Below are positions 8,799-63,318 of a DNA stretch of 64,000 bases, piece after piece. The translations under genes were made by a program, and so were the position numbers. Under the pieces are notes generated by a model. It searched no databases and was not told the origin of the DNA. It saw nothing but the letters and a program-made list of their open reading frames with translations. Position 1 is the stretch's first letter. Every line of letters starts with the position of its first letter. The stretch is taken from positions 186,001-250,000 of the IMG/VR virus record IMGVR_UViG_3300023174_002543. One strand, 5' to 3'.

Positions 8799-8834
8799 GA
8801 TAATCCTTTTTAATTATCACGTATTTATCTCTTT

Positions 8835-9440: not shown

Positions 9441-9501
9441 AATGATAATTGTTGAGTTGACATAGTTGTTAGTATAGCACAAATAGGATTTATTGTCAAC
9501 C

Positions 9502-10103: not shown

Positions 10104-10126
10104 TTGTGTATTATAGTACTTTTTTC

Positions 10127-10681: not shown

Positions 10682-10785
10682 ATTAATAGTATACTATATT
10701 GTATTTAGTATGTCAATATTTATTTGACCAAAATCAAATAAATACTAATAAGAAGTATTATAACTAAAGTATAAGGAGTCAATCT

Positions 10786-48918: not shown

Positions 48919-49749
48919 TTATTTGTCAATCTTTAATAAATCCTTAATATCATAAAGATGTTTCATGTACTCACTAACATTTCCCAACACACTAACTGCA
49001 ATATCACCTTCTCTACGAGGTCCATACTTAACGTCAATGGTAAGGTTGTTAACTGTTTCAAATATACTAACCATTTCTTTAACGGTATAACCTACACCAT
49101 GACCCAAACATTCAATATTATTGCTAGGTGTTTCTATGGCAGTACGCAATGCATCGCATATTTCATTCACGTGTACATAATCACGTACACAAGTACCATC
49201 CCAACTTTCATTGTAGTTTTTCCCAAAGATAGTAAATTCACCAGTGTCTTTTGCCTTGAATAAATTGTACATTAATCCATCAGGGTTAGTAGGTGCAAAT
49301 CCATCACTACCAATTACATTGTAAAATCTAAAGATAGTATATGGTATGTTTCTGTATTCACACATTTCTTTAATACAATCTTCAGCCGCTTTCTTACTTG
49401 TACCGTATGCGCTTTCGCATTTTTCGGCTGCACCTGTACTAGCAAAAATAAAATTATCTGTATCTACCCAAGTTAATAGATTCAATGAACCAATCATATT
49501 AGTCAAATAATAATCAGTGGGTGTCCTTTGACTTTCACCTACATTGACTAATGCGGCTAGATGTATAACTGCATCAAAATGTTCTTTCTTTAATGTAAAC
49601 TGGTTTTTGATATTTCTATTAAAGTGTCTACTAACTTTATATTGAGGATCTTTGATATCTAATCCCACAATCTCATACTCACCATCTAACATCTTACAAA
49701 GATGTGATCCTATGTAACCACTGTTACCTGTTATTAATATTTTTTTCAT
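48919..49749 (-). CDS. NAD-dependent nucleotide-sugar epimerase (GalE-like)
   Basis: TGNSGYIG, HLAA...VGES, YGTSK, RFYNV and DGTCVRDYVHV motifs. Confidence 0.9.
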   Translation of the reverse strand: MKKILITGNSGYIGSHLCKMLDGEYEIVGLDIKDPQYKVSRHFNRNIKNQFTLKKEHFDAVIHLAALVNVGESQRTPTDYYLTNMIGSLNLLTWVDTDNFIFASTGAAEKCESAYGTSKKAAEDCIKEMCEYRNIPYTIFRFYNVIGSDGFAPTNPDGLMYNLFKAKDTGEFTIFGKNYNESWDGTCVRDYVHVNEICDALRTAIETPSNNIECLGHGVGYTVKEMVSIFETVNNLTIDVKYGPRREGDIAVSVLGNVSEYMKHLYDIKDLLKIDK

Positions 49750-51083
49750 ACTAGTTCAAATAATCCTAATCCTGTTACTTCCTCTAATGGTTCATAGCTA
49801 GGATCCTTGGTTAGATAAGTTTCCTTGTCTGTATAGATTATACGATACTTGTGTTTATTTGTCAATACACTACGAATGTCATCAATGCAAATTAAACTAC
49901 GACCCAAATCTTTAATGTAATCACTATGTTTGACCGTAGTGTTCTCTAATATTTTGGCTGTGTTACTGTTTGATTGCTTTGGCTTAAACTCATTGAAACA
50001 TTCATTCCATTTATGAAATACATCTGATTCTAAATTTTGTGTATCTCGCAATGCATTTTTGTCATACCAAGATTTAGCAGTTGGGTAAGCGTGATATGCA
50101 TCCTTAACATCTTCTGCCATTTGTTTTTTATTAGTTACAAAGAAGAATCTACCTTTAAAATTATTAGTCCAACGTTGATTCTCTAAACAGAACGTGGGTA
50201 GTTGTGTAATCTGTTCATAGAAAGCCATACCATAACTCTCAACAATACTAGGATTGAATGCAACTCTTGCACTTGTAATGAAATCTACTTTTTCTTGACC
50301 AATAATACCTACTTTTATTTCATAAGGTACACCAATCTTCTTTAATCGTTCTTCAAATTTCTTAGCACCATTTGCGCTAGTCATTACCTTAGCGGGTAGT
50401 TTAGTTTGTTCAATCAGTTCTAAGAATAGTTCAGGGTTTTTGCCTTCTTCCCAACGACCAACAAACAATATACCCTCACGTGGCTTGTGATGTTCTTCTA
50501 GCAATCCTTGTTCTGTAATTGGAATAGGTAAATGATAAGATGATTCATCTAGGTTAAGCCAATTGTATTTGCTTTGTGTACCAACATATACACCGGGAGT
50601 ACTAAGTTGTTGACGCATCAACACATTGGTATTATATAAGAAAGGATTCTTTGTATCCTTAAAGATTTGACTTTCTAAATGAGTATATGCAATAACTTGA
50701 ATACAATCTTCAAGTCCCATTGTAATAGCAACCTGCACTGTTTCGTATGTGTTACAAATGAATGCATCATATAAATTATGTTCTAATGCTTCTACAATAC
50801 TATTTCGGAAGTTAGCCATACGTTCATAGTTGAATGTATCACCATACATAAAGATATTACTATGTGTTGTATAGGCTAATGACACTTTAGGATATATAAT
50901 ATTTGCCTTCAATGATTTAACAAACTCATTGTCTTTGGGTTCTTTATCAGTGATTATATCAACTTTAATGTTATGGCTATCCATCAATTCGCAAAAACTC
51001 TTTGCAAATTGCCCTATACCACCATGAGGTATAAGAGTTTGATAACTTACTAAGAAGCCAATTCTTTTATCATATGTTCTCAT
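49746..51083 (-). CDS. GT-B (GT4-like) glycosyltransferase
   Basis: GGIG, LFVGRWEEGK and PSIVESYGMAFYE motifs. Confidence 0.85.
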   Translation of the reverse strand: MRTYDKRIGFLVSYQTLIPHGGIGQFAKSFCELMDSHNIKVDIITDKEPKDNEFVKSLKANIIYPKVSLAYTTHSNIFMYGDTFNYERMANFRNSIVEALEHNLYDAFICNTYETVQVAITMGLEDCIQVIAYTHLESQIFKDTKNPFLYNTNVLMRQQLSTPGVYVGTQSKYNWLNLDESSYHLPIPITEQGLLEEHHKPREGILFVGRWEEGKNPELFLELIEQTKLPAKVMTSANGAKKFEERLKKIGVPYEIKVGIIGQEKVDFITSARVAFNPSIVESYGMAFYEQITQLPTFCLENQRWTNNFKGRFFFVTNKKQMAEDVKDAYHAYPTAKSWYDKNALRDTQNLESDVFHKWNECFNEFKPKQSNSNTAKILENTTVKHSDYIKDLGRSLICIDDIRSVLTNKHKYRIIYTDKETYLTKDPSYEPLEEVTGLGLFELV

Positions 51084-51624
51084 TGTTTTAATTTCCAAAT
51101 AATATGTTCATGTTTATCATGCCATTTACATTCAAAGACAGTGGCACCAGGTCCAGTATATAATGCAGTAAGTTTATAACCAAACTCTAACCATATAGGT
51201 TTATCTGATATGTTACACTTTACTGGAAACCAAGCAAATTTTAACTCTGTACCTACTAATTTATTATAAAACATTTCGTCTAGTGTCGTTGGTCTATACC
51301 CCGTGCCCATCATTTTTTACCACCAGTGACCCATTTAGTGTATGCTTCCACAAATAGTTTTTCACGTTCAGGATTATTAAGTTGTTTTACGTGTTCAACG
51401 AATCTAGGTACACCTCGATCGGCTGAGATTATCTCTAACAATCCTACATCAAGTTCAGTCAATGCAATTTTATTAGTAATATCAATAAACTTACCACTTG
51501 AATCTTTTTCCTGAGCAACCACTACATCAAGTTCAACCGTAACACCGTGAATCGTGCCTCTACCGGTGAGTGGCACTTTCATTACTGCACCCATGTCATT
51601 GTCTAAAATGCGTGTACTAATCAT
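51080..51624 (-). CDS. Two small hypothetical proteins (51080-51313, 51310-51624)
   Basis: Coupled ORFs. Confidence 0.5.
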
Positions 51625-51638
51625 TTAATATTTTCTTG

Positions 51639-52271
51639 TTATTCATTCATTCTCCATTTGTTCTCTGGTAATCCATAGTCCCACTTTGAATCCATTTCAA
51701 CATTCCATCTAGTAGTAGCAACATTGAAATCTGGTATCTTCATTTCTTTAGGGTTAGATGCCGGTTCTAAAATAACAATACGATTATTTGGTTGTGCAGC
51801 AAACTGTCCATTATCGCACTTGATAAAGTTAAAGGACTTATGATCCTCAACGTCTTCACTGTGTCCACAATCAAGAGTATTAAAATCGGGATGTGAGGAA
51901 TCAACAGTAAAAAGATATTCACCCTCTAACCATGAACCATCTTTCATTTTAATTTTACATCTCATATTTGCTATCATTGCTTTTTTAATTACAGTGATAT
52001 CATAAGACATGCTGTTCCATAATTGTAAAAAATCTAAAGGATACGGATCACCTTCTATAGGTTTCCAGCAGTAAGCATGTAATGGAAGTTTATCATATAA
52101 CGCACCATAGTGATTTAAGTACGATTCAATTCTAAATGCTTGGCTACGTTGAGACTTTATTGATATCCACCAACATGGTTCAAGTTCCCCTTGACCCTTC
52201 TCAAAATCATACAAAAATTCTCTGCGAATAAAACATTTTACTGGTGGCAAGTTTGCTACTAAAAAACTCAT
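51639..52271 (-). CDS. Conserved phage protein of unknown function
   Basis: G.Y.FTVD, EDHK and GQFAAQPNNR motifs seen in aquatic phages. Confidence 0.7.
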   Translation of the reverse strand: MSFLVANLPPVKCFIRREFLYDFEKGQGELEPCWWISIKSQRSQAFRIESYLNHYGALYDKLPLHAYCWKPIEGDPYPLDFLQLWNSMSYDITVIKKAMIANMRCKIKMKDGSWLEGEYLFTVDSSHPDFNTLDCGHSEDVEDHKSFNFIKCDNGQFAAQPNNRIVILEPASNPKEMKIPDFNVATTRWNVEMDSKWDYGLPENKWRMNE

Positions 52272-52272
52272 T

Positions 52273-52923
52273 TTAATATTTTCCTGATGCCAATACTATT
52301 TTACAAATATGTTCTAATCGTTCAATGTGTTCATAGGCACGCCATGGACTTGTGTCAATAGCAACTACTCCATGTCCTTTGATACCTACAATGTCATATG
52401 CGATGTTTCCATAGTCATCTAATTCTAATCTATAGTGACACTGGTCAGCAAGTTCTTGGCTAATTGGTTTCACATCTCCTACATTGGGCGCTACCTTTGT
52501 ATAACGATTAAGTTCTGGAAAACTATCACTAATTGTACTTAAATCAATACCGGCATGCATCGCAGCAATACAATATGTAGGATGAACGTGTACGACTACC
52601 CGCACATCGTCTGTATGTTGTCCCATTTCTTTTTGCAATCCAAAGTGTAAGGGGAGTTCTCCGCTGGGCTTTAAGTTAGCACTTATATCGGTATAAAATT
52701 CTTCCTGCCAAGATTTTGTTAAGAAAGGCGGGGAGGCACTGATATTATCAACTAATTTAATTTTCTTAAATTGATCGGGCTGTAATGTTTGCTTACGTAC
52801 ACCACTCGGGGTGATGTAGAAATGGTCACGGTCATGATGCCGAATACTCACATTGCCGTCACGACTTGTAATCCAATTACGCTTGTAGGCGTCTTCTAAT
52901 ACTTCACATATTGTTTCTAACAT
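52273..52923 (-). CDS. Class II aldolase/adducin-family metalloenzyme
   Basis: GNVS.R, ITPSG, PSGE..LH, HVHP and GHG motifs. Confidence 0.88.
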   Translation of the reverse strand: MLETICEVLEDAYKRNWITSRDGNVSIRHHDRDHFYITPSGVRKQTLQPDQFKKIKLVDNISASPPFLTKSWQEEFYTDISANLKPSGELPLHFGLQKEMGQHTDDVRVVVHVHPTYCIAAMHAGIDLSTISDSFPELNRYTKVAPNVGDVKPISQELADQCHYRLELDDYGNIAYDIVGIKGHGVVAIDTSPWRAYEHIERLEHICKIVLASGKY

Positions 52924-52926
52924 ATT

Positions 52927-53100
52927 TTAGGTTCCCCATTTTACGTTGAGCCATACTCGTTCATGTATGTAATGTAATACAGTTAACACTATATTAGCCC
53001 ATATTGCCCCACTCCACCCTGCCCAAATTGCAGTTACGCATGTAGCTATTATACGCCATACTATGGCTCTTACTATTGTTCTTTTGTGTGTTTCTGACAT
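52927..53100 (-). CDS. DUF2061-like small membrane protein
   Basis: ET..RT...AI.WR...Y.HER.W....WG. Confidence 0.7.
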   Translation of the reverse strand: MSETHKRTIVRAIVWRIIATCVTAIWAGWSGAIWANIVLTVLHYIHERVWLNVKWGT

Positions 53101-53957
53101 TAAGTTCCCCACTCGTTTTTGAATAGTGGCACTTGTAATCTATCACTGTACCGCCAGCCTTTTTGCATTGCCATTTCTGCCACTGCACGATTGTTAAGGG
53201 AATACACCCGCTCAACACCACCGACAGGCATAAGATACACGCTACCTTTAAAACCATTTTTACGGTACTCATTTACTGCTCTTTCTGCATCTTTTACATC
53301 ATGTTCAGTAGCAACTACCAATTTTAAATAAGTATGACCAACATCTTGGTATTGACACACAACATCTGGTTTGATAGCATCACTCCAACTTTCACCACTG
53401 CAAGGTAGTTTAGCACTTACACTAAATGTTAATGCATTGTATCCTCGTTCTTTATTGCCTAGAGTCCAGTTCAATAAATAGTGTCTGAAATCAGGTGTAA
53501 GAAGTTGTGTACCGTTTGTTTCAAAGGTCAATTCTTTGAGTGATTTCATCTTATCATTTTGTAATAAATCTATAAATGATTTTTGCCATCCGAGAAGAGG
53601 TTCACCGCCTGTAATAACTAGATGTTCATCTATCCAACGCTCATGAGGGAGCATATCCATAATTCCATCTACGATAGCATCAGTAGAGATAACAGCACTA
53701 AGATGTTTAAACCTAGGATCCCAACTAGCATAACTATCGCAACCAGTACTGACTAAAGGTAATTCCTTATAATTATTATATAAGTGTACTACTTGTGCAA
53801 TTTCTTCTGCCTCAGCACTTAACATACCACCGGGCATACCAAATCCCGCACATTTAAAATTACAACCGAATGTACGAAGGAATACGCTAGGCACACCCAT
53901 GTATCTACCTTCACCTTGTATACTATAAAACAACTCTGCGATTTTAATTTTGCTCAT
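53100..53957 (-). CDS. queE: 7-carboxy-7-deazaguanine synthase (radical SAM)
   Basis: [19 protein letters not shown]...CDS (insertion before the third Cys), TGGEP, ETNG. Confidence 0.9.
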
Positions 53958-54138
53958 TTTTAATCCATAGTTCTAATGCTTTTGCCGGATAAATCTGAAC
54001 AGAGCCTTTTTCAGTATCGCTTTCAACTGCATAGCCTTCAGGTGTCAATTCAGTTGAATATGTACCAACAACAACAACACCGTGCCATTGTGACCCGGAA
54101 ACTTTTTTTACTAAATCACCTAATTTAAATTTACTCAT
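53944..54138 (-). CDS. dfrB: Type II (R67/DfrB-family) SH3-fold dihydrofolate reductase homologue
   Basis: [17 protein letters not shown]...[14 protein letters not shown]....[10 protein letters not shown] is co-linear with the R67 core, including VQIY. Confidence 0.88.
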
Positions 54139-54713
54139 CTTGTTCCAACCAATTTGTTACTTGATCCTCTGCATCTACTTGGCTGGATGCATATACGGTA
54201 AATGTTGCAACACCATTGCGGCATCTAACATTGAACGGGACAGTACCATTAGGTAACCATCCGGTTTCTACTTCACGTTTTACTTCATAGAATTGCATGT
54301 CACTAGATTTAATTCTACCGAATAATTCATCGGCTATTTGTTTTGCTGTTTTCATTATTGATCCTTACCAATGTCTTATCACACCTGCTATGATAAAAAA
54401 GTTTGTTATTACATATATTAACACAATACAGGTGCGGATGCAAGCAATACGGTCAGCTTCCTGATCTGTATCACCTGACTTCTCTCCTAAACTTTTAGCC
54501 CAAAGTCTCCACATTTTTTTCATTTTTTACCTGTGGATAATAATATGTACAATCACTACGGCGTATGTCCCAACTGCTGCCTAGACCACCTAGGTGTTGT
54601 AGGGCCCATCTAGCACGGTCATGTGCTTGTGGCACTGCCATTGGCCAGGGCGTATTGTTGCGGCACTGAATGTACTGCTTTAGATAAACATAACTTTGTT
54701 CACGTGCCCACAT
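54131..54713 (-). CDS. Three small ORFs (54131-54355; 54365-54514 MWRLWAK.LGEK membrane peptide; 54495-54713)
   Basis: 54365-54514 translated manually; it matches a familiar small myovirus protein motif. Confidence 0.55.
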
Positions 54714-54839
54714 GTCTGCCCCTAATTTTACGCCACACTATTTCAAATGTGTCAGGCCTGATAAACACTTCCCATCCTTTGGGAATATGCTCAGGAAAAA
54801 GACTTGCCTTACCGTTACTGTGTTTATACAGTTTCATTC

Positions 54840-55289
54840 TTAACCTTCGTAAATAGCACTATTAGCACCGTGTTCTGCACATTCTACTTTAACGCAATAG
54901 CAACGGTTATTGGTATTAGCTCTAATTAAATTGTCAGCAAATGTGAAAGCATGTTGGGCAAACTTCTCTGCACCAACACCATCAAAAATTCTAATCTCTG
55001 CTAGATCCAATGCTTCTAGTTCTTTAAATTTAGATAGATGTGGATCTGATTTATCCAGTGCCAGCTTATGGTCGAAATGGTCTTCTAGCCATGCCTTAAG
55101 CATTTTAAGTCCACCGAAGTCTACTGCCCAATTTTTATCATCTAGTGTGTCACATCCAAATGTAAATGTAAAGGCTAGACTGTAACCATGTAGTAAATGA
55201 CAATGACTGTGGTCTGCATTGGGTTGTCTAAATACAGCACTTAGTCCAATGTTGTGTCCGTAATGTTTTGTTGAATAATATTTTGCCAT
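54840..55289 (-). CDS. queD: 6-carboxytetrahydropterin synthase
   Basis: HC..LHGY, W.VDFG.LK, FDH and E...NSA motifs. Confidence 0.9.
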   Translation of the reverse strand: MAKYYSTKHYGHNIGLSAVFRQPNADHSHCHLLHGYSLAFTFTFGCDTLDDKNWAVDFGGLKMLKAWLEDHFDHKLALDKSDPHLSKFKELEALDLAEIRIFDGVGAEKFAQHAFTFADNLIRANTNNRCYCVKVECAEHGANSAIYEG

Positions 55290-55292
55290 GTT

Positions 55293-55360
55293 AATTCTCC
55301 TATGTTAATTATAGCATAGGACGCAGAATTTGTATACCGGGATGAGCCCATAAGGCCGGT
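55293..55360 (-). promoter_or_regulatory. Structured queD leader: SD-sequestering hairpin with an extended -10 in the loop
   Basis: AAUUC..UCCUAUG pairs with CAUAGGA-GAAUU; TGcTATAAT overlaps the loop. Confidence 0.55.
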
Positions 55361-55365
55361 TATCT

Positions 55366-55833
55366 TTATTTACCTTTTTTGGCTTCTGCCTGATAAACAC
55401 GTTTACGTAAACTTGTACTACTGAAACTATGGTCACGCCCATTAAATACAATTTCAATGCCACGCTGAAAACATGCTTGATCTCCAGTAAATTGTTTACC
55501 TTCATATTCAATACCTAGTATACGAACATTAAGAGGTAATATCAATAACAAGTCAACCAAGTCTTGTTCAGTTTGATATACAACTACCTCATCAACATAG
55601 CGGCATGCACTTAGTTGAATTTGTCGTTCTACAATGCTTTGAATAGGTTTGTTCTTTGTATCAGGTCTATCAAGTGTTGGATCAGTTTGTAATCCCGCAA
55701 TCAAATAATCACAATGATTTTTTGCCTCACTAAGCATTGCAATATGACCTGCATGTAACATATCAAAAGTACTAAAGGTAATTCCAATTCGTTTACCATC
55801 TTTGTTAAGTTTTTTAATTTTATTGAATATCAT
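55366..55833 (-). CDS. TagD-like cytidylyltransferase (HxGH nucleotidyltransferase)
   Basis: TFD.LHAGH, R...L.A..YVDEV and SST motifs. Confidence 0.88.
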   Translation of the reverse strand: MIFNKIKKLNKDGKRIGITFSTFDMLHAGHIAMLSEAKNHCDYLIAGLQTDPTLDRPDTKNKPIQSIVERQIQLSACRYVDEVVVYQTEQDLVDLLLILPLNVRILGIEYEGKQFTGDQACFQRGIEIVFNGRDHSFSSTSLRKRVYQAEAKKGK

Positions 55834-56559
55834 TCTAACTCCGTAATTTCTTCTACTATTGGATCCGGTTCACCTTCTTCACTAAACCCATATGTAACTT
55901 CATATTCTCTACCTATATAATGAAATGTTTCAGTAAAGGTTCTTTGGTTGTTACTAGAATCTGTTGGACCAATCAATGCTAAAACTAATAGCATGTGTTC
56001 ACGTTCAGTCCCCAGTAAAGTTCTGCGTTTTTTCATGCCTATACTTTTTAAAAATTCAAGTGCTTCCTCTTGATTTCTGAAGGGTGAACGATTCATCTTT
56101 TTAATATCTCAATTATCTTTTCTTGTTCTTTTAGTTTGAGCCATTCTTCTTCTGGTGCAAATGTACTACATTTTCTTAATGATTCATCAATCAACCATTT
56201 AAGTTCGTATAGTTCTTGTTTAACACCCCAAGACACAAATCCATCATTACGTGGATTTGTGCATTCATAACGCATGGCCCATATGCCATGTTTAATAGCA
56301 TTTAAGTCCCAGTCTTTACGAAAGCCCATTATTCAACTCCCATACGGTCTTTAATGTAATCACTTATCCTACTAGAATGACTACGAATTTCTTTATCATT
56401 GAGAGATTGTATATTATTGTTAAAGGTTAATGCATGTTTGGCACATTCCTGAACAATCAACTCGGCGAACTTAGACATAAAGGCAGTTTGTTCTTCCCAA
56501 CTATCGCCAAAGTTTGATTTGGCCGCCTCAGACCAAAGTTGTTTAACTCGTTCGTTCAC
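55830..56559 (-). CDS. Three small hypothetical proteins (55830-56096, 56093-56329, 56329-56559)
   Basis: Coupled ORFs. Confidence 0.55.
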
Positions 56560-57239
56560 TTACAACCTTGTCGGGCAATTTGATAGAATTCAGCACGTGC
56601 AGCTGAATCAGTTTTGAACCCGCCACCTAATCGTGTAGTTACTGTTGAACTACCTGTATCCTCAACACCACGTGACTTTACACAATAATGTTGGGCGTCA
56701 ATCATAACTGCGACATCCTCTGTCTCTAAGATGAACTGTAAGGTGTGAAATACTTGTTCAGTTAGCCGTTCCTGTATTTGTGGACGCTTGCTGAAATATT
56801 CTACAATCCTGTTAATCTTACTAAGCCCTAAGACTTTATCTTTAGGGACATAAGCTACTGTCGCTAATCCATCTATGACCACAAAGTGATGTTCACAGTT
56901 AGATTGAACACTTACGTTACGCTCACATACCATTTCGTTGTACTTCATCTTATTATCGACTGTTGTACATTTTGGAAATGCCTCGTAATCTAAACCCCAG
57001 AAAATCTCATTCACATACATCTTAGCTACTCGCTTTGGTGTATCAATCAGACTATCATCAGTTAGGTCTAAACCTAATACTTCCATGATGCCTTGAAAAT
57101 GACTTTCAATTAACTCAATCTTACCCTTACGATCCATATGACCTGTATAAGTAGTTGGTGTTTCAACTCCCATCTTAACTAGATGTTCGTGTACTTTTAA
57201 TCCTAATTCAGGATCCGTTTTTGTTTTATTATAACTCAT
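56556..57239 (-). CDS. folE: GTP cyclohydrolase I
   Basis: TPKRVAKM, SNCEHH, GLSK..R, RPQIQERLT and H.C...RGV motifs. Confidence 0.96.
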   Translation of the reverse strand: MSYNKTKTDPELGLKVHEHLVKMGVETPTTYTGHMDRKGKIELIESHFQGIMEVLGLDLTDDSLIDTPKRVAKMYVNEIFWGLDYEAFPKCTTVDNKMKYNEMVCERNVSVQSNCEHHFVVIDGLATVAYVPKDKVLGLSKINRIVEYFSKRPQIQERLTEQVFHTLQFILETEDVAVMIDAQHYCVKSRGVEDTGSSTVTTRLGGGFKTDSAARAEFYQIARQGCK

Positions 57240-57298
57240 AGATAACCTTCCTTTGTGATGGTTTTGTTTTGATATTTTGTAACCGTTGTGTTACATAC

Positions 57299-57853
57299 TT
57301 ATTTATCTGTTTCTTCAATACTATTAAAAATATTCGCATTTGATGATGGACCAAACGGCCATGCAGCATTTGGATTTAACGGGGGACGTTCTTTTAATTC
57401 GATATTCTCTTTGATTATTGTTCCGTAATCATCTGTATAATCAATTTGAAATGGTGCAGCAATCATAACATATTCGTCTTCAAATTGCCAATCGTGATTA
57501 CCTTCATGTAACCAGGCAGCACCACCTCGTTCGTATTCATCATCTTCATCACCATCAAAGTAACAAGTCTTGATACGTTCTTGTTCTTCTTCAGTGATAT
57601 CATCACTAAATTCCCAATCAACATTAATGCTATCATCAAATTCAGTGCCCCAGCCTATGTCAGTTTTGCAATAAGCAAGATTAGTATCTTTATATGGAAG
57701 GTCAGTTTCTTCTTCAACAAACCCTTGTCCCCAACGATAAAGTTCTTCCATATTAAACCAGCTAGTAGTACCATCTGGATTTTCACGATACATTTCTACT
57801 CGCCAATAGACGCTTTTCTTTTCTAACGGTTTAATACAATAAACATTACCCAT
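57299..57853 (-). CDS. Acidic hypothetical protein, paralogue of 59031-59603
   Basis: KP..KKS...RWG..F; C-terminal AWPFGP. Confidence 0.65.
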   Translation of the reverse strand: MGNVYCIKPLEKKSVYWRVEMYRENPDGTTSWFNMEELYRWGQGFVEEETDLPYKDTNLAYCKTDIGWGTEFDDSINVDWEFSDDITEEEQERIKTCYFDGDEDDEYERGGAAWLHEGNHDWQFEDEYVMIAAPFQIDYTDDYGTIIKENIELKERPPLNPNAAWPFGPSSNANIFNSIEETDK

Positions 57854-57854
57854 G

Positions 57855-58631
57855 TTATTTCCTTATACGATTGTTGGCATTTTCAACTGCTTCTAGTATA
57901 CCAATGCTATTATCAGTTCGTTGCAATAAATCAATTATAGCACGAACATCTTTAGGAAAGCAAGCACCACCGTACCCTAAACTTCCATCTGGTCCAGGTA
58001 CATCTAAATGGCTATCACCCATTCTAGTATCTGTTTTCAACATACCTGTAAAGTGTTCCCAATTTCCACCTAGACTATCAACTAATATCTTATATTGATT
58101 CATCATAATAACCTTGTTAGCTAGGAAGGTATTCATAAAATACTTTACTAAACTAGCAGTTATCAAATCAGTAAACAAAATAGGTCCTGTAGTATTGATA
58201 GCACTTTGCGCTAACATATCTAATAAAAATAAATTGTCACCAGTGCCACCTATAAAGATGAATTTTGGATTAAGATAATCATGTATGGCGGTTTTTGCTA
58301 CAAGAAATTCTGGTATGTGCCATAGATTTTCAACACCCTCATACTGTTTCCAGAATACAGGGTCAGTTGTACTTTTTACAACAATATGTCCTTTATACGA
58401 TGCTAATTTATTTAGGGTAGTTCTTACTATAGAAGTATCACAACTACCGTCGGGATTACTTGGTGTAGGTACACATACAAAAATTACATGCGGCTCACTA
58501 TCAAGTAATTCTTGTATTGATACTGAACCACTAATAATCGGATCGTGAAATAATACAGTATTGTCAGTGCCTAACCAGCTAGCCTGTACTGCTTTACCCA
58601 CATATCCTAAACCAACAATACCCACTCGCAT
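57855..58631 (-). CDS. ugd: UDP-glucose/GDP-mannose 6-dehydrogenase family (lacks the C-terminal domain)
   Basis: GLGYVG, CVPTP, KST, PEFL, KY..N and GYGGACFPKD (catalytic Cys) motifs. Confidence 0.88.
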   Translation of the reverse strand: MRVGIVGLGYVGKAVQASWLGTDNTVLFHDPIISGSVSIQELLDSEPHVIFVCVPTPSNPDGSCDTSIVRTTLNKLASYKGHIVVKSTTDPVFWKQYEGVENLWHIPEFLVAKTAIHDYLNPKFIFIGGTGDNLFLLDMLAQSAINTTGPILFTDLITASLVKYFMNTFLANKVIMMNQYKILVDSLGGNWEHFTGMLKTDTRMGDSHLDVPGPDGSLGYGGACFPKDVRAIIDLLQRTDNSIGILEAVENANNRIRK

Positions 58632-58633
58632 TA

Positions 58634-58822
58634 TTAGGCCTTAGCTTCTTTACGTGCGGCTTTCTCAGCAGTAATTTCATTACGGCGTGCTTTGATTGCT
58701 TTAGCCATTTCTGCTAATGCTTTGCGGGCACGTGTGCCTGCTGCCGCGTTACCTTTTTCAAATTTTTCATGTTCTGCTAGGTAGGCTTCTAGTTGTGTGT
58801 TAATATCATTATGTGCGCTCAT
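58634..58822 (-). CDS. Hc1/histone-H1-like small DNA-binding protein
   Basis: KFEKGN.AAGTRARK.L..M....K..R motif. Confidence 0.75.
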   Translation of the reverse strand: MSAHNDINTQLEAYLAEHEKFEKGNAAAGTRARKALAEMAKAIKARRNEITAEKAARKEAKA

Positions 58823-59603
58823 AGTTTCTCCTTTGATTTACGCTTTGGTTTTGCCTCAGTAATTGTTACCGATGCAATTGCTTCTCTTACTTCTTTTAAT
58901 AGTTGTTCATCATCCCAAACAAGTTCAGTTGAACCATCCTCAAAAGTTTTTACAGTCAAATGCGTACCTTGATTAATCAAGGGCCAGCCACCTGATGGTA
59001 CGTTTTCTGTTTTCTTTTTACGTGTTGCCATTAATCTTCCTCTTTAGGACCTTCTTTTGGTCTATCAAAGGGCCATTTGACTGTTTCAATAGTAGACGCA
59101 AGTTCGGGTCCAAACGGCCACTGAGTGGGTTTTTCTAGCATTGCTCTTGCCTCAGCCTCAGAAGTTATAACCTCTAGTTGATTGTTAATTTCTTCTTCAG
59201 TCTGACCTGTGTGTATGATTTGCTCAGTATCACCATCAACACGTTCAATGATTAAATCACAATCAATAATCATTTCGGTATCACCTTGTGACCAATCATG
59301 TTCCTCTAAATCGTAATATGAATTTTCTTCTAAGAATTCTTCGAGCCATTCTTCTAGGTCTTCATCATCAACAGTGACTTCTTCCCAGCAACCATCATTA
59401 GTTTCTACTAACTCAGTTTCATAATCACAATTATAGATATCCACACCTGCTTCAATATCAGGGGGATTATCATCATCTGTATAAACAATAAATTCTCCCC
59501 AACGCCAGCCCGTTTCTGCTGTGATAGTTGCACCATCTTTGTGATAGTAATTACGTTCAATAATTGATTTTTTCCACTGGGGTTTTACGCTCCATTCAGC
59601 CAT
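58819..59603 (-). CDS. Small protein (58819-59031) and acidic protein with WPF motifs (59031-59603)
   Basis: Coupled ORFs. Confidence 0.6.
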
Positions 59604-59604
59604 T

Positions 59605-60780
59605 TTAGTATTTTCCTTCTCTAGTATGTTTACGATAATCTGTACTCATTCTAAGCATTGTATCACCTTTGCCTTCAAGTACGTCAATGATTCGGTCAAT
59701 CGTGCCGTCGTTGTAGTCACTAATCTTACCTATATGTTCACTCGGTTTCGCTAATAACTTTTCTAATTTGTCTAGTGCATCTTCTATTGACCAAGGAACA
59801 TATAATCTGGAATAATCATTGGCAAAAGTTTCAGGAAAACTCCGGTAAGCAGGATAAAGAACATTACAACCCAAAGCATCTGCTTCCGAGACAGTATTAC
59901 TGACCCAATCTTGTAACGCACAATTAAATACAACACGACTATCATTAACAATATTGTAATAATCATTTTTATCTAAATCCTCATTTAACGTTAATAGCCC
60001 TTTTGATTGTAAATCATGTGTTCGTTGCATGTAACTAAGATTGTTGCTTTTTAGTTTTGCACCACTACATACACAAAATTCTACATATGTATTTGGATGG
60101 CGCACGTTCCATGCTTCAATGAGGTCCATATAAAAGTCTGGTTGTTTCTCTTGGTCCCATCTTGCACTAAACACAACACGATGTTTGCGTTCATTGAATG
60201 GTTTGATAGAACTAACCCGAGACCTCACCTCTTCTTTACCGAATGCAAGACCTGATATATTATAGATTGGGGCTTCCCAGCCTGCAATCTTCATGTGCAT
60301 TACCATTTCTTCATTCGTAGCGAGTACACCATCGACAAAGCTATCCACCATCTTTTCATAATGCCCCATAAATTTAGACATATTCCATACGTGAACAAAA
60401 TCATCAGGATCAATGGATTGAGCAAGACAGCGAACAAAAATCCTAGGACGATTAATGCTGTCGATTTGATTAAGTATATAAGGAAGGCTCTCGATACCGG
60501 GTTGAAACATGTCCTCAAAGTAGATAACATCTTCATTATTAAGTTCTCCTGCTTTCATCATACGAATCAAATTCATTAGTTGCGACATACCGAAATATGT
60601 GCGACCATGTGCATCTAATACTTGCCCAGTAACAATCGCTTGGTCGTTACTTAGTGTTTCACCGGGGACAATGACATAATCAATGCCCCGTTTCTCAAAG
60701 ACAACACGATTCCACTCTTGTAATTGTAGAGTGTACCTTGCTTTATAAGGCTCTAGCCCCATATAGTAAAATTTACGCAT
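59605..60780 (-). CDS. GT-B glycosyltransferase
   Basis: F.ARW..EK.P, and QDWVSNT..EA...G....P...SFPE (variant E-x7-E region). Confidence 0.8.
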   Translation of the reverse strand: MRKFYYMGLEPYKARYTLQLQEWNRVVFEKRGIDYVIVPGETLSNDQAIVTGQVLDAHGRTYFGMSQLMNLIRMMKAGELNNEDVIYFEDMFQPGIESLPYILNQIDSINRPRIFVRCLAQSIDPDDFVHVWNMSKFMGHYEKMVDSFVDGVLATNEEMVMHMKIAGWEAPIYNISGLAFGKEEVRSRVSSIKPFNERKHRVVFSARWDQEKQPDFYMDLIEAWNVRHPNTYVEFCVCSGAKLKSNNLSYMQRTHDLQSKGLLTLNEDLDKNDYYNIVNDSRVVFNCALQDWVSNTVSEADALGCNVLYPAYRSFPETFANDYSRLYVPWSIEDALDKLEKLLAKPSEHIGKISDYNDGTIDRIIDVLEGKGDTMLRMSTDYRKHTREGKY

Positions 60781-60985
60781 GTCTACGTGCGTCCTCATCC
60801 CAACTGTTCTTTGCTGGCTTTCCAGTCATATACTTGTTGAATTGCCTAAATACATAACTACGCATATCGTACAATGTTGCCTCATCATACTTATAACCAT
60901 AATCTACGCAAAATTCTAAATACTTTTCTAAATCTTCAAAAATTTGACGAACTCTGTGGTTAGGTTGAAATGATTGTTTTGCCAT
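60773..60985 (-). CDS. Small conserved hypothetical protein
   Basis: IF.DLE.Y..FC..YGY.YDE..LY. Confidence 0.6.
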   Translation of the reverse strand: MAKQSFQPNHRVRQIFEDLEKYLEFCVDYGYKYDEATLYDMRSYVFRQFNKYMTGKPAKNSWDEDARRHA

Positions 60986-61000
60986 TTGTTTTTTTCTCTC

Positions 61001-61519
61001 TTAGATTACAATACTATTGTATGGTTTTGTTGTGTTATAATAAATCGTAGCACCGTTTTCACCGTCTTCTGAAACAGTAATTTCAATGTCACGATCAGGG
61101 TACCGTGTTGCGATAGTTTGATATAAATCATCACTTATCATTTCACAGCTTTTGTTATTCAATTCAAGTATGCCTTTACCGAATAAATTTTCGATCCAGC
61201 GTTTGAATTGAATGAACTCAATGTCACGATTATTGTGGAACACTTGAATGCCCACAGTAAAGTGAAATATATGACGATGCGGCATTCCTAAGAAACTCAC
61301 ATCATATTCGTCTCCCGTCTTTAGTGCGGGGTCATGATTGGCATCATAATATGCATGAATGCCTTCACGGCGTAGTGTAACCCATATCATACGCTTTGCC
61401 GCATCACTGATACGTGTGCGTTGTTCTGCTAAAGCCATTTGTCGTGGGTCAAATACTTCTTCTACTACTGTAGATTCTTGTACTACTTCTGTTACTTTAG
61501 TCTTTTTTGGTCTTGCCAT
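61001..61519 (-). CDS. QueD-paralogous T-fold protein, DpdL-like (putative CDG decarboxylase)
   Basis: EGIH, LGMPHRHIF (LxxxHRHxF), SCEM and VSEDGENGA motifs; start moved to MARPK. Confidence 0.65.
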   Translation of the reverse strand: MARPKKTKVTEVVQESTVVEEVFDPRQMALAEQRTRISDAAKRMIWVTLRREGIHAYYDANHDPALKTGDEYDVSFLGMPHRHIFHFTVGIQVFHNNRDIEFIQFKRWIENLFGKGILELNNKSCEMISDDLYQTIATRYPDRDIEITVSEDGENGATIYYNTTKPYNSIVI

Positions 61520-61520
61520 T

Positions 61521-61703
61521 TTAAAATGTCCTATTAAGTGTGGCCCATGTGAGCCATTGATGAAAGGTTTTGTAAACTGATTCTGCTTCACGTTCATCTT
61601 GCGGCACTTTTACACCACGAACATAAAAGCCTTCTTGTGTAATTTTTAGCATTTCGTCAGACGCATCATTAGCATAAAATGTTACTGTGTTTTTTGTTTC
61701 CAT
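61521..61703 (-). CDS. Small hypothetical protein
   Basis: GFYVRG..V...E.EA..VY..F..W. Confidence 0.5.
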   Translation of the reverse strand: METKNTVTFYANDASDEMLKITQEGFYVRGVKVPQDEREAESVYKTFHQWLTWATLNRTF

Positions 61704-61746
61704 GTATGTAGCACCTTTATTATCTGTGATCCAAGTTAAAATTTGA

Positions 61747-63318
61747 TTAGACTTCATTTAAGATTTTTTCCATCTCATCATCACTATCTTCTATCACTTC
61801 TTCAAATTCAACTTCTTCTGTATTTGCTTTTACTTCTTCAAACAATCCTGATTCTATGATAGAAATTGTATTAGTAGTTTTCTTACCACTCATACCTTGA
61901 CTACCGCTTTTAAATTGTTCCCATAACTTTTCATGTTTTTCAATTAAAGCAATTGATTCATCTTTAGTTTTACACGCAAATACTTGGTCAATGATATCTT
62001 TGAAAAGAATCTTTTCAAAACGCTGACTCATTAACATACTTGGAATTACACCTTGTTCATACTTACGATTAGCCTCTTGTACAGCATTCATGTGCATCCA
62101 AACATTATGACTTTGAATCAATGTATAACTCAATGTATCCCAACTTGTTTTAGTTTCTTTACCATGCTGACCTAAGAAACCTTGACCACGATAACACATA
62201 TCCTTAAGTACTAGTTTATCAGTTATTGGACTATCTGTAAAGACTTTATGGATACCTTCAGCCACAACTGCATCACTATATTTGCGAGTGTCATTTGCAT
62301 ACGACTTTTTCTCCGCAGTCTTTTCCATACTATATGACCACTTCTTGTTGTGTTCAATACTAGTATTAAAATATGCTAAGCCTTTTGCCGCGCCAAAGAA
62401 TGGGCTTGCACAATCAAATGTAATTTTGAGATTTGAGTTATGATATTTGCGTATTGCTTTTTGAATATCAGTAAATAATACCGCATACTCCATAATACTT
62501 GTACCCAAACAATGAATCAAATCGTGTTTTCCTGGTTGTAGTAAACCATCATGAATTATACCAACCATGCGTTTAAGCATTAACTCAACATCAATCTTAT
62601 TCTGTCCACCAAATGCCCAACCGTTAAAGTGATTGTCTGGATAGATATTTGGGTCACAATACTTTTTCATTTCTTCATACCAACTATCACTTTGTGTATG
62701 AGTACGACCTTGCAATACGTTTAAGAACTTACAACTACCATTGCGATTCTTAATGAAGTATTCATTATTGATATGTGTTGCTTTAATAGCATCTTCAATA
62801 GTTTTAATACCATGCGCTGATGTTTTAGTCTTTGGGTCTTGAATATGATAAGTTGTCAATGACTGTGAAGGAATATCTAAACACATACCGTAGTTCATGT
62901 ATGTATCCATCCATGTCAATACTTGTTGACGTTTCTTCATAGCACGGGGACAGTTAGGATCTTTCCAATCAGCGGGCCATTGTGCTTTAAGAATTTGGAA
63001 ACCACCTGAATCACCTAACATAAATGTGTTAGGGTCACGTTTACGAATAATTGATTCGTTATTGTCATCCTTAGTTACATCTAAGTTTGCATGACCTGCA
63101 CTATACAAGCCCCACTTATAATAGTAAAGACCTTTTTGTGCGTTTAAAAAGTTAAGACATTCAACATCACCATTGAACTGTGCAGGGATACGTGCAGCAT
63201 CAAAATAGTTCTCGCCTTCACGTTGTTTACCTAAGCCAGCAATATAAAAACTACTAATAGCAGGCAAGAATGTTGCCCACTCATCATTATGTTTTTGTGA
63301 TAAATTGTCTTGTTCCAT
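61747..63318 (-). CDS. dpdA: TGT-fold base-exchange enzyme (DpdA-like)
   Basis: GDSGGFQ, CLDIP, VLQG, WAFGG, HCLG and TFDCAS motifs; no CxCxxC zinc site; same locus as folE/queD/queE. Confidence 0.75.
   Translation of the reverse strand: MEQDNLSQKHNDEWATFLPAISSFYIAGLGKQREGENYFDAARIPAQFNGDVECLNFLNAQKGLYYYKWGLYSAGHANLDVTKDDNNESIIRKRDPNTFMLGDSGGFQILKAQWPADWKDPNCPRAMKKRQQVLTWMDTYMNYGMCLDIPSQSLTTYHIQDPKTKTSAHGIKTIEDAIKATHINNEYFIKNRNGSCKFLNVLQGRTHTQSDSWYEEMKKYCDPNIYPDNHFNGWAFGGQNKIDVELMLKRMVGIIHDGLLQPGKHDLIHCLGTSIMEYAVLFTDIQKAIRKYHNSNLKITFDCASPFFGAAKGLAYFNTSIEHNKKWSYSMEKTAEKKSYANDTRKYSDAVVAEGIHKVFTDSPITDKLVLKDMCYRGQGFLGQHGKETKTSWDTLSYTLIQSHNVWMHMNAVQEANRKYEQGVIPSMLMSQRFEKILFKDIIDQVFACKTKDESIALIEKHEKLWEQFKSGSQGMSGKKTTNTISIIESGLFEEVKANTEEVEFEEVIEDSDDEMEKILNEV

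What the first reader, a model, noticed from the sequence alone, without database searches (positions are those of the whole stretch)
48919..63318. 7-deazaguanine DNA-modification locus interleaved with sugar-activation and transfer genes: candidate new hypermodified base
SEEN: one co-oriented ~14-kb block directly downstream of a probable sliding clamp. It encodes a DpdA/TGT-like enzyme, a DpdL-like T-fold protein, a GT-B, Ugd, FolE, a cytidylyltransferase, QueD, DfrB, QueE, a class II aldolase, a second GT-B and a GalE-like epimerase. No QueC, QueF, ArcS or Gat-QueC is visible in the window. KNOWN: FolE, QueD and QueE convert GTP to CDG, and phage DpdA enzymes put 7-deazaguanines into DNA against restriction. 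As I recall, DpdL carries an LxxxHRHxF motif and was proposed to decarboxylate CDG to 7-deazaguanine. The phage deazaguanines I know of are not glycosylated. INFERENCE: sugar genes are interleaved with the deazaguanine genes rather than in a separate block, with one GT two genes from the DpdL-like gene. This suggests a sugar- or uronate-decorated deazaguanine, or a second glycosylated base layered on dDG/dCDG. The aldolase-fold enzyme and DfrB could supply extra C7 chemistry. The alternative is that the sugar genes glycosylate virion proteins or host LPS.
Basis: partly seen in the sequence, partly recalled or inferred. Interest (0 to 1): 0.9.

Follow-up and report, generated by a model that had tools for sequence, protein, structure and literature searches.

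The report
Deazaguanine DNA-modification locus with built-in glycosyltransferase
A freshwater jumbo phage carries a gene block for replacing guanine in its DNA with a 7-deazaguanine, and a sugar-transferring enzyme is so consistently attached to this block in unrelated phages that the final base is probably sugar-decorated, a kind of DNA base not yet described.

Summary
Window 48919-63318 is one co-oriented minus-strand block in a 367-kb freshwater jumbo phage. It encodes FolE, QueD and QueE, and a DpdL with the LxxxHRHxF signature. It also encodes a 523-aa protein with no Pfam hit whose confident model matches only tRNA-guanine transglycosylases (Z 16-17.6). This is a DpdA-type enzyme of an undescribed subfamily that includes PA5oct gp168.

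The key new result concerns the first glycosyltransferase, GT1, a GT4-type GT-B enzyme. Its family sits next to dpdL in every lineage examined: PA5oct-like phages, Phosso, ACP17, Xanthomonas X1 and BUDD, Burkholderia BCSR5, cyanophage BUCT-ZZ01 and a metagenomic contig. In 80 IMG/VR loci fetched with a distant GT profile, 77 carry dpdL, at a median gap of 236 bp. GT1 is absent where DpdL is absent.

A nucleotidyltransferase and a GalE-like epimerase recur around this core in different arrangements. The Ugd is truncated and strain-specific. DfrB most likely serves the thymidylate cycle. The aldolase is variable.

Best reading: CDG synthesis, DpdL conversion, DpdA insertion into DNA, then glycosylation by GT1. 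No chemistry was available, so the sugar and its attachment point are inferred.

The parts
61747..63318 (-). DpdA-type DNA guanine transglycosylase of an undescribed subfamily (523 aa; PA5oct gp168 type)
   Evidence: AlphaFold model has pLDDT 87.8. The only significant PDB matches are tRNA-guanine transglycosylases: Foldseek E 3e-7 to 4e-4 and VIA Z 15.9-17.6, against <=10.7 for other TIM barrels. Viral matches include phage TGT/DpdA proteins. D103/S104/G106, D148, H269/G272 and D302 are invariant in 44 diverse relatives. No PF01702 hit.
61001..61597 (-). DpdL (QueD-like T-fold; proposed CDG decarboxylase). The core is residues ~68-190; the ORF has an N-terminal extension of ~67 aa.
   Evidence: LxxxHRHxF motif present (motif defined in PMC10516641). 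tblastn hits ACP17 DpdL at 6e-33 and phiST CGPG_00067 at 2e-7. phrog_17812 E 4e-30.
60773..60985 (-). Small conserved ORF (70 aa) between dpdL and GT1, function unknown
   Evidence: Found in 65 of 80 close relatives and in 18 of the 80 distant loci. No family hit.
59605..60798 (-). GT1: GT4-type GT-B glycosyltransferase, the conserved partner of DpdL
   Evidence: Weak Pfam Glycos_transf_1 / Glyco_trans_1_2 hits; homologues in X1 and BUCT-ZZ01 score above the cut-off. (D/E)x7E motif conserved. The model (pLDDT 58.5) matches OtsA, MshA, PimA and BshA. Adjacent to dpdL across lineages.
58634..59603 (-). Three ORFs of unknown function: an acidic 190-aa protein, a paralogue of the 184-aa ORF, and two small basic ORFs of 70 and 62 aa
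   Evidence: No family hits. The small ORFs are conserved in 35-45 of 80 relatives. pI 4.05, 9.05 and 9.69.
57855..58631 (-). Truncated UDP-glucose/nucleotide-sugar dehydrogenase-like gene; a strain-specific insertion
   Evidence: Only the UDPG_MGDP_dh_N and central domains are present. It matches positions 76-296 of the 413-position NDP-sugar dehydrogenase model. 0 of 80 relatives carry it. A co-occurring ~88%-identical strain skips 57307-58633.
57299..57853 (-). Acidic 184-aa ORF, function unknown
   Evidence: No family hit. Present in 8 of 80 relatives.
56556..57239 (-). FolE, GTP cyclohydrolase I
   Evidence: PF01227 E 1.1e-60.
55366..55833 (-). Small nucleotidyltransferase (CT), nearest to RfaE domain II and TagD
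   Evidence: PF01467 E 1.7e-11. TIGR02199 6.6e-22 and TIGR01518 2.9e-16, both below their cut-offs. In 42 of 80 close relatives, and in 29 of 80 distant loci at 55-65% identity.
54840..55289 (-). QueD (6-carboxytetrahydropterin synthase), phage CxxxHGY variant
   Evidence: PF01242 E 5e-13. Aligned with phage QueDs.
53944..54138 (-). DfrB-type (type II) dihydrofolate reductase homologue, 64 aa
   Evidence: NF000331 E 1.3e-23, below the cut-off for resistance alleles. Present in 11 of 80 relatives.
53100..53957 (-). QueE, radical-SAM 7-carboxy-7-deazaguanine synthase
   Evidence: PF04055. Five QueE NCBIfam models at E 4e-15 to 4e-10.
52273..52923 (-). Class II aldolase/adducin-family enzyme; variable accessory gene
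   Evidence: PF00596 E 2.2e-27. Nearest MtnB and FucA, below their cut-offs. In 13 of 80 relatives.
51639..52271 (-). phrog_3704 protein (labelled 'ferredoxin' in PHROGs); variable, possibly mobile
   Evidence: PHROG E 6e-76. 97% identical in two relatives whose neighbouring genes are ~40-86% identical.
49746..51098 (-). GT2: second GT4-like GT-B glycosyltransferase
   Evidence: PF00534 E 1.4e-5, just below the cut-off. A 39%-identical homologue lies between FolE and DpdA in BUCT-ZZ01. Present at the end of the block in relatives wherever the flank reaches it.
48919..49749 (-). GalE-like NAD-dependent sugar epimerase (276 aa)
   Evidence: PF01370 E 2e-31. TIGR01179 galE E 1e-45, below its cut-off. 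Follows GT2 in relatives. SDR homologues occur beside the core in 37 of 80 distant loci.

Best explanation
The block is a phage system that modifies guanine in DNA after replication.

Established family chemistry: FolE, QueD and QueE convert GTP to 7-carboxy-7-deazaguanine (CDG).

Inferred from Cui et al. 2023: with no QueC, DpdL processes CDG, by the proposed decarboxylation to 7-deazaguanine.

Inferred from fold, catalytic residues and context: the 523-aa TGT-fold enzyme, a new DpdA subfamily, exchanges guanine in phage DNA for this base.

New inference: GT1 is an obligate partner of the DpdL branch. It is a GT4-type, probably retaining, NDP-sugar-dependent GT-B enzyme. It adds a sugar to the deazaguanine-derived base, most likely after insertion into DNA.

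In this clade GT2 may add a second sugar. The small nucleotidyltransferase and the GalE-like epimerase would supply or interconvert the activated donors.

The result would be a glycosylated 7-deazaguanine that protects the genome from restriction. The truncated Ugd, DfrB, the aldolase and the phrog_3704 gene are accessory passengers.
For: - Gene identities.
- DpdL motif and homology.
- TGT fold of the 523-aa protein. Invariant DSGG, LDxP, HxLG and FDxxSP residues.
- Divergent members of this family sit with FolE, QueE, QueC or DpdL in other phages.
- GT1-dpdL linkage. PA5oct gp167 is 37% identical to ACP17 gp124 (E 4e-60) and lies between gp168 and gp166. ACP17 has gp123-gp124-gp125. X1, BCSR5 and BUCT-ZZ01 show the same linkage. 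In Phosso, GT1 abuts DpdL although DpdA is 170 kb away. The metagenomic contig L101 has it too.
- 77 of 80 IMG/VR loci fetched with a GT profile only 20-24% identical to the window's GT1 carry dpdL, at a median gap of 236 bp. The other 3 are cut at a contig end.
- No GT1 is found where DpdL is absent (L098).
- The GT catalytic-type (D/E)x7E motif is conserved.
- CT-like and SDR genes flank the core in different orders. A second CT paralogue lies directly upstream of GT1 in some relatives.
- PA5oct DNA resists several G-containing restriction enzymes, and nucleases that sense hypermodified DNA target it (PMC12191111).
- dpdL plus dpdA from ACP17 and phiST gave no dDG in E. coli, and the authors suggested that other enzymes are needed (PMC10516641).
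Against: - There are no chemical data for this phage or for any GT1-carrying relative.
- 7-deazaguanine itself offers no obvious O-nucleophile for a GT4 enzyme, so the acceptor atom is unknown.
- phiST has DpdL and no GT1, and its DNA contains plain dDG. GT1 is therefore not needed for the DpdL/DpdA reaction in every phage.
- Four other DpdL phages showed no GT1 family.
- The GT1 model is of low confidence (pLDDT 58.5). It resembles small-molecule GTs (MshA, OtsA, BshA), not known DNA glucosyltransferases.
- The genome holds other glycan genes elsewhere, so GT2 and Epi could serve another target.
Confidence: 0.55

Rival explanations
1. GT1 acts before insertion, on a free base or pathway intermediate. 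It might glycosylate CDG or 7-deazaguanine, or make a sugar-linked precursor or cofactor that DpdL or DpdA needs. The DNA would then end up with plain dDG, or with a base that was glycosylated before exchange.
For: The structural neighbours of GT1 are small-molecule GT4 enzymes (MshA, BshA, OtsA). Phosphoribosyltransferase genes sit in the BUCT-ZZ01 and L101 clusters, which hints at free-base metabolism. GT1 follows DpdL rather than DpdA when the two are separated, as in Phosso.
Against: phiST makes dDG without any GT1. TGT-type pockets are tight, and a sugar-bearing base would need a reshaped pocket. No data distinguish pre-insertion from post-insertion action.
Confidence: 0.2
2. The sugar genes glycosylate something other than DNA, such as virion proteins, host envelope or a soluble metabolite. 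They lie in the block through shared early or middle expression and inherited synteny.
For: The genome carries further glycan genes at about 148-153 kb and 351-361 kb. GT2 is absent from the 80 distant loci. Remote GT paralogues in PhiXhv phages sit with GlmS and a deacetylase and have no dpdL. Ugd and the aldolase are clearly accessory.
Against: For GT1 the linkage to dpdL survives changes of host, of phage family, of DpdA subfamily and of gene order, and survives separation from DpdA. Inherited synteny does not explain this.
Confidence: 0.15
3. The TGT-fold enzyme and its partners modify tRNA, phage or host, rather than DNA. GT1 would glycosylate a deazaguanine in tRNA, by analogy with mannosyl- and galactosyl-queuosine.
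For: The fold is that of the tRNA-guanine transglycosylases. A language-model feature search listed tRNA-queuosine mannosyltransferase clusters among GT1's neighbours, 9 of 100 at score 0.97.
Against: QTMAN_N (PF12038) is not detected in any GT1-family member, and GT1's structural neighbours are generic GT4 enzymes. The block lies among replication and repair genes. PA5oct DNA itself resists restriction at G-containing sites. All phage TGT-like enzymes studied so far act on DNA.
Confidence: 0.05

Closest known systems
Cellulophaga phage phiST dDG system (DpdA3 + DpdL + FolE/QueD/QueE; Cui et al. 2023, PMC10516641)
   Same: It uses the same QueC-less route: FolE, QueD and QueE, a DpdL with the LxxxHRHxF motif, and a TGT-superfamily DNA transglycosylase.
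   Different: phiST has no GT1-family gene near dpdL, and its DNA carries plain dDG. Its transglycosylase is the short DpdA3 (259 aa). The window's enzyme is 523 aa and only marginally similar to DpdA3 by profile comparison (hhalign E 7.7e-4, probability 25%).
Acidovorax phage ACP17 cluster gp119-gp126 (listed as a DpdL phage by Cui et al. 2023)
   Same: It has QueD, FolE, DpdA, a GT1-family gene (gp124), DpdL (gp125) and QueE in one block.
   Different: ACP17 uses a DpdA3-type enzyme and lacks GT2, CT and Epi in the block. gp124 was left as hypothetical, and its link to DpdL does not appear in the papers searched.
Pseudomonas jumbo phage PA5oct gp162-gp168 (Wroclawvirus)
   Same: It has the same DpdA subfamily (gp168, 35% identity), a GT1-family gene (gp167), DpdL (gp166) and QueE (gp162), and the same upstream 240-aa gene. 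Its DNA resists G-containing restriction enzymes, and nucleases that sense hypermodification target it.
   Different: Its block has no GT2, Epi, Ugd or detectable CT homologue; gp177 is not similar to CT. The chemical nature of its modified G is not reported in the papers searched.
T-even phage DNA glucosyltransferases (alpha- and beta-GT acting on 5-hydroxymethylcytosine)
   Same: The concept is the same: a sugar is transferred after replication from an NDP-sugar onto a modified base in DNA, sometimes by two successive GTs. Beta-GT is also a GT-B enzyme (own knowledge).
   Different: The base differs (C, not G), and the acceptor there is a hydroxymethyl group. GT1 and GT2 show no sequence or fold preference for these enzymes; their best matches are GT4 and GT20 enzymes.
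Glycosylated queuosine in tRNA (mannosyl-Q and galactosyl-Q; QTMAN/GTDC1)
   Same: It is the only known case of sugar decoration of a 7-deazaguanine derivative in a nucleic acid, and QTMAN carries a GT4-type C-terminal domain. QTMAN clusters appear among GT1's feature neighbours.
   Different: The substrate is tRNA, and the acceptor is the cyclopentenediol of queuosine. The defining QTMAN_N domain is not detected in GT1.

Membership tests
DpdA (DNA guanine transglycosylase, TGT superfamily) | TGT-type TIM-barrel fold | tested here: met
   Model pLDDT 87.8. The top 8 PDB matches are all TGTs, at VIA Z 15.9-17.6 over ~300 residues; the next fold scores <=10.7. Phage TGT/DpdA proteins appear in BFVD.
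DpdA (DNA guanine transglycosylase, TGT superfamily) | Conserved catalytic aspartates (the DSGG motif Asp and the nucleophile Asp in an FDxxxP-like motif) | tested here: met
   D103-S104-G-G106, D148 and D302 are invariant in 44 relatives at 25-40% identity. The motifs align in register with DpdA3-type proteins. Their equivalence to the TGT catalytic residues is inferred from motif similarity, not from a residue-level superposition.
DpdA (DNA guanine transglycosylase, TGT superfamily) | Sequence membership in a described subfamily (bDpdA, DpdA1-4) or in Pfam TGT | tested here: not met
   No PF01702 hit for the protein, the genome or 44 relatives. No PDB sequence hit. hhalign against the DpdA3 type gives E 7.7e-4, probability 25%. 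It should therefore be filed as a new subfamily, not as DpdA1-4.
DpdA (DNA guanine transglycosylase, TGT superfamily) | Genomic association with 7-deazaguanine synthesis genes | tested here: met
   The window, PA5oct, L098 with QueC/FolE/QueE, L101 with DpdL/FolE/QueE, and 72 of 80 loci.
DpdA (DNA guanine transglycosylase, TGT superfamily) | Base exchange on DNA | not testable with these tools
   This needs an enzyme assay or analysis of virion DNA.
DpdL (proposed CDG decarboxylase) | LxxxHRHxF motif replacing the QueD CxxxHGH motif | tested here: met
   The motif is present at residues 103-111. Its definition is in PMC10516641.
DpdL (proposed CDG decarboxylase) | Homology to the founding members (phiST CGPG_00067, ACP17 gp125) | tested here: met
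   tblastn E 2e-7 and 6e-33. HMM of the family.
DpdL (proposed CDG decarboxylase) | Occurs with DpdA, FolE, QueD and QueE but without QueC | tested here: met
   No QueC over the cut-off in the whole genome. The caveat is a divergent viral PP-loop QueC-like gene 36 kb before the window start, in a different gene context.
DpdL (proposed CDG decarboxylase) | Decarboxylase activity on CDG | not testable with these tools
   The activity was not shown experimentally even for the founding members.
GT4-type GT-B glycosyltransferase (GT1) | C-terminal Glycos_transf_1-type Rossmann domain | tested here: met
   The window protein scores below the cut-off (E 3.6e-4). Family members from X1 (E 8e-12) and BUCT-ZZ01 score above it.
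GT4-type GT-B glycosyltransferase (GT1) | Ex7E-type motif of retaining GT4 enzymes | tested here: met
   Dx7E in the window and BUCT-ZZ01 proteins, Ex7E in the ACP17 and X1 proteins. The second Glu (E305) is invariant. Read from the alignment.
GT4-type GT-B glycosyltransferase (GT1) | Two-Rossmann-domain GT-B fold | tested here: inconclusive
   The model has pLDDT 58.5 and a poor N-terminal domain. It still matches OtsA, MshA, PimA and BshA at E ~1e-9 with TM ~0.5. An Atlas neighbour model aligns with GT4 proteins at TM 0.7-0.8.
T4-type DNA glucosyltransferases | Sequence or closest-fold similarity to alpha-GT or beta-GT | tested here: not met
   No such Pfam hit at E <= 5. Neither enzyme appears among the top 50 PDB matches or the top 30 Swiss-Prot matches.
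tRNA-queuosine mannosyltransferase (QTMAN) | QTMAN_N domain (PF12038) | tested here: not met
   Not detected in five GT1-family members or in either GT2 homologue at E <= 5. The only link is a feature-similarity lead.
UDP-glucose 6-dehydrogenase (Ugd) | Three domains, including the C-terminal UDP-sugar-binding domain | tested here: not met
   Only the N-terminal and central domains match. The protein ends at 258 aa, at position ~296 of the 413-position model. The next ORF is unrelated.
DfrB (type II dihydrofolate reductase) | Homology to the ~78-aa SH3-like DfrB family | tested here: met
   NF000331 E 1.3e-23 over 53 of 78 positions. The score of 82.7 bits is below the 137-bit cut-off used for naming resistance alleles.

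The most novel reading that the evidence does not exclude
Phages carrying the DpdA-GT1-DpdL core place a glycosylated 7-deazaguanine in their DNA. These include this abundant freshwater jumbo-phage clade, PA5oct-like Pseudomonas phages, ACP17, X1/BUDD, BCSR5, Phosso and cyanophage BUCT-ZZ01. This would be a class of hypermodified purine not yet described. GT1 would be the first glycosyltransferase known to act on a deazapurine in DNA, and the PA5oct gp168-type enzyme would be a fifth viral DpdA subfamily.
Probability: 0.5. Interest if true: 0.9.

Novelty: new variant of a known kind. Interest (0 to 1): 0.78.

Why it matters
All known 7-deazaguanine DNA modifications are small C7 substituents. 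Sugar decoration of DNA bases is known only for hydroxymethyl-pyrimidines. A glycosylated deazaguanine would be a new base chemistry and a new DNA-acting or deazapurine-acting glycosyltransferase family.

It could also explain two published observations. The first is why dpdL plus dpdA alone failed to reconstitute the modification in E. coli. The second is what the unidentified 'modified G' of the therapeutic candidate phage PA5oct is.

The family is very large. GT1 has at least 7,999 homologues with E <= 0.001 in metagenomes, the scoring limit of the search; the 120 listed are 82-100% identical. The DpdA-like protein has 797 clusters at 50% identity. The modification would therefore be ecologically widespread, and it would bear on restriction, on type IV and glycosylase defences, and on sequencing of environmental phage DNA.

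The hypothesis can be tested directly, because several cultured phages carry the core.

Tried and rejected
- Near-identity DNA search of the block against GenBank phages found nothing.
- Sequence searches of the 523-aa protein against Pfam, PHROGs and PDB found nothing. A family-profile search of PDB gave only non-significant QTRT1 hits at E 2.5. The identification rests on structure.
- The QTMAN (queuosine mannosyltransferase) lead from the Atlas search was not borne out by Pfam or by fold ranking.
- Reading Ugd through its stop into the next ORF was rejected. The 184-aa ORF has its own homologues in relatives that lack Ugd, and no dehydrogenase domain.
- The QueC-like gene at genome 149.6 kb was considered as a missing QueC. 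It belongs to a virus-only PP-loop family and sits with an FkbM methyltransferase, a cupin hydroxylase-like gene and a GT-A-like gene. It is unrelated to the PAPS-reductase-like gene in the X1 cluster. It was left unassigned.
- A hydroxymethyl-pyrimidine target for the GTs was considered. The only ThyA-family gene is a full-length canonical match at 353 bits, which gives no support.
- Isoelectric points do not distinguish DNA-binding from other roles.
- Public runs holding this phage are kept only as contigs, so no read-level modification signal could be examined.
- The sliding-clamp identity of the upstream gene could not be confirmed.

Full report
**Setting.** The window is bases 186001-250000 of a 367,104-bp IMG/VR virus record judged complete. 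G+C is about 36% throughout. The region around the finding carries replication and repair genes: DNA ligase, an exonuclease, UvdE and a homing endonuclease. Identical or near-identical sequence occurs in lake and freshwater metagenomes from two studies. No GenBank phage is close at the DNA level. This is an uncultured freshwater jumbo phage.

**Observation.**
- Pfam and NCBIfam confirm FolE, a CTP_transf_like nucleotidyltransferase, QueD, QueE, a class II aldolase, two Glycos_transf_1-type proteins, a GalE-like SDR, a DfrB homologue and a nucleotide-sugar dehydrogenase.
- The dehydrogenase is incomplete. It stops after the central domain and lacks the UDP-binding domain.
- The 198-aa ORF is a DpdL. 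It carries LxxxHRHxF, hits ACP17 gp125 and phiST CGPG_00067, and aligns with the family.
- No QueC, QueF or Pfam TGT reaches threshold anywhere in the genome.

**The transglycosylase.**
- The 523-aa protein has no hit in Pfam, PHROGs or PDB sequences.
- An exhaustive search found 797 clusters of relatives at 50% identity.
- With 44 diverse relatives as the alignment, the model reached pLDDT 87.8.
- Its only significant PDB matches are bacterial, eukaryotic and archaeal tRNA-guanine transglycosylases. Z is 15.9-17.6, against at most 10.7 for other TIM barrels.
- Viral matches include annotated phage TGTs and a Vibrio phage nt-1 protein.
- The DSGG, LDxP, HxLG and FDxxSP residues are invariant and align with DpdA3-type proteins.
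- Divergent members sit next to FolE/QueE with QueC, or with DpdL.

I conclude that it is a DpdA-type enzyme of a subfamily not among bDpdA and DpdA1-4. PA5oct gp168 and a Phosso protein are the cultured representatives.

**The glycosyltransferase link.** Eighty close relatives (DpdA 74-91% identical) share the synteny DpdA-DpdL-small ORF-GT1-...-FolE-CT-QueD-QueE-small ORF-GT2-Epi. Ugd is in none of them, and the aldolase, DfrB and phrog_3704 genes are present only in some. That alone could be inherited order. The informative comparisons are the distant ones.
- Searching GenBank phages with GT1 found only six records, all of them DpdL phages, with the GT within a few genes of dpdL.
- ACP17 has gp123 (DpdA3 type), gp124 (GT) and gp125 (DpdL) in that order.
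- X1 has GT, DpdA, DpdL and QueE.
- BCSR5 has the same set.
- Cyanophage BUCT-ZZ01 has QueE, a PRTase, QueD, FolE, GT2, DpdA, DpdL and GT1.
- PA5oct gp167, between gp168 and gp166, is 37% identical to ACP17 gp124.
- In Phosso the GT abuts DpdL although the DpdA-like gene is 170 kb away.
- A search with ACP17 gp124 found 23 records. The 18 with E <= 1e-12 all have dpdL nearby. Five remote paralogues lie beside GlmS and a deacetylase instead.
- As an independent test I fetched 80 IMG/VR loci with a profile of the distant GTs. These are 20-24% identical to the window's GT1. Seventy-seven carry dpdL at a median gap of 236 bp, and the other three are cut at a contig end. Seventy-two carry the new DpdA family and one carries DpdA3.
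- Conversely, a DpdA-like gene that travels with QueC instead of DpdL has no GT.
- phiST, RHph_I1_18, Ahp1, Bakedbeans and D479 have DpdL without the GT.

GT1 is therefore a subset feature of the DpdL branch. It is independent of which DpdA subfamily is used.

**Nature of GT1.** Family members reach the Pfam threshold for Glycos_transf_1, and the (D/E)x7E motif is conserved. The low-confidence model and an Atlas neighbour both resemble GT4 and GT20 retaining enzymes: MshA, PimA, BshA and OtsA. It does not resemble T4 glucosyltransferases. A lead to queuosine mannosyltransferase was not confirmed.

**Other sugar genes.**
- In the 80 distant loci, a CT homologue (55-65% identical) occurs in 29, an SDR related to Epi in 37, and a Ugd-like gene in 6.
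- These genes sit either upstream of DpdA or directly after the GT.
- Some close relatives have a second CT paralogue immediately upstream of GT1.
- This recurrence in different orders supports a role in donor supply, though less strongly than the case for GT1.
- GT2 is confined to this clade, BUCT-ZZ01 and, at distant loci, X1 and BUDD.
- The Ugd here is truncated and strain-specific. A co-occurring strain skips exactly this segment.
- The genome encodes a canonical ThyA and no ThyX, which gives DfrB an ordinary role.
- Further glycan genes lie elsewhere in the genome.

**Mechanism.**
- Shown by homology: GTP is converted to CDG by FolE, QueD and QueE.
- Inferred from the literature: DpdL converts CDG, by the proposed decarboxylation.
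- Inferred from fold and context: the new DpdA inserts the base into DNA.
- Inferred from conserved linkage: GT1 glycosylates the product, most likely on DNA. GT2, CT and Epi extend or supply the sugar in this clade.

The acceptor atom is unknown. Plain 7-deazaguanine lacks an obvious O-nucleophile. So either DpdL's product differs in GT1 phages, or the carboxylate of dCDG is the acceptor, or an N- or C-glycoside is formed.

Published data fit this reading but do not prove it. PA5oct DNA resists G-site restriction enzymes, and nucleases that sense hypermodification attack it. dpdL plus dpdA alone did not give dDG in E. coli. No paper in the library describes a glycosylated deazaguanine in DNA or the GT-DpdL link.

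**Verdict.** It is a new variant of the 7-deazaguanine DNA-modification systems. It has a new DpdA subfamily and a conserved glycosyltransferase partner that predicts a new hypermodified base. The hypothesis can be tested in cultured relatives.

Noticed in passing
window 51639-52271: The phrog_3704 gene (labelled 'ferredoxin') is 97% identical in two relatives (L023, L079) whose neighbouring genes are only ~40-86% identical, and it is absent from many others. It looks like a recently exchanged or mobile gene.
   Followed up: partly
window 59031-59603 and 57299-57853: These are two very acidic paralogous ORFs (pI ~4.05) that share a WPFGP motif near the C-terminus. They have no family hit and are scattered among relatives.
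   Followed up: partly
genome G000 148758-152702 (outside the window; L002): A second glycan-like cluster: an FkbM-family methyltransferase, a virus-only PP-loop QueC-like protein with a C-terminal HCGxCxxC motif, an Asp/Asn hydroxylase-like cupin, and a GT-A-like gene at 152.5 kb.
   Followed up: partly
L098 (Logan contig, 8452-10845): A 32%-identical DpdA-like gene is followed by a myo-inositol-1-phosphate synthase gene and an unusually long QueC (301 aa), with FolE and QueE nearby. This may be another decorated deazaguanine variant.
   Followed up: no
L085 4093-4554 (BUCT-ZZ01) and L101 5962-6489: Phosphoribosyltransferase genes sit inside two DpdL/GT1 clusters. This hints at handling of the free deazapurine base.
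   Followed up: no
L091 7221-8372 (Vibrio phage Bakedbeans gp176): DpdL is the C-terminal domain (residues ~273-392) of a 383-aa annotated protein (the stop-to-stop frame is 394 aa). The N-terminal part matches none of the profiles used.
   Followed up: partly
L095 4747-7981 (Xanthomonas phage PhiXhv-15): A remote paralogue of the GT lies beside GlmS and an LmbE/BshB-like deacetylase, with no dpdL. This is a different sugar pathway of unknown target.
   Followed up: no
L017, L018, L039, L042, L043, L053 (between the small ORF and GT1): Some close relatives carry a second nucleotidyltransferase paralogue, 31-38% identical to CT, directly upstream of GT1.
   Followed up: partly
window 61398-61597: The DpdL ORF has a ~67-residue lysine- and glutamate-rich N-terminal extension that is absent from the other DpdLs. 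The true start may be an internal Met near residue 70.
   Followed up: no
window 47865-48869 and 45413-46330: A UvdE-type UV endonuclease gene lies directly downstream of the block, and a homing-endonuclease-like gene lies further on.
   Followed up: no
genome G000 351382-353488 (L094): A canonical ThyA lies next to a second SDR epimerase/dehydratase (319 aa). A clear Glycos_transf_1 gene lies at 361.0 kb.
   Followed up: partly
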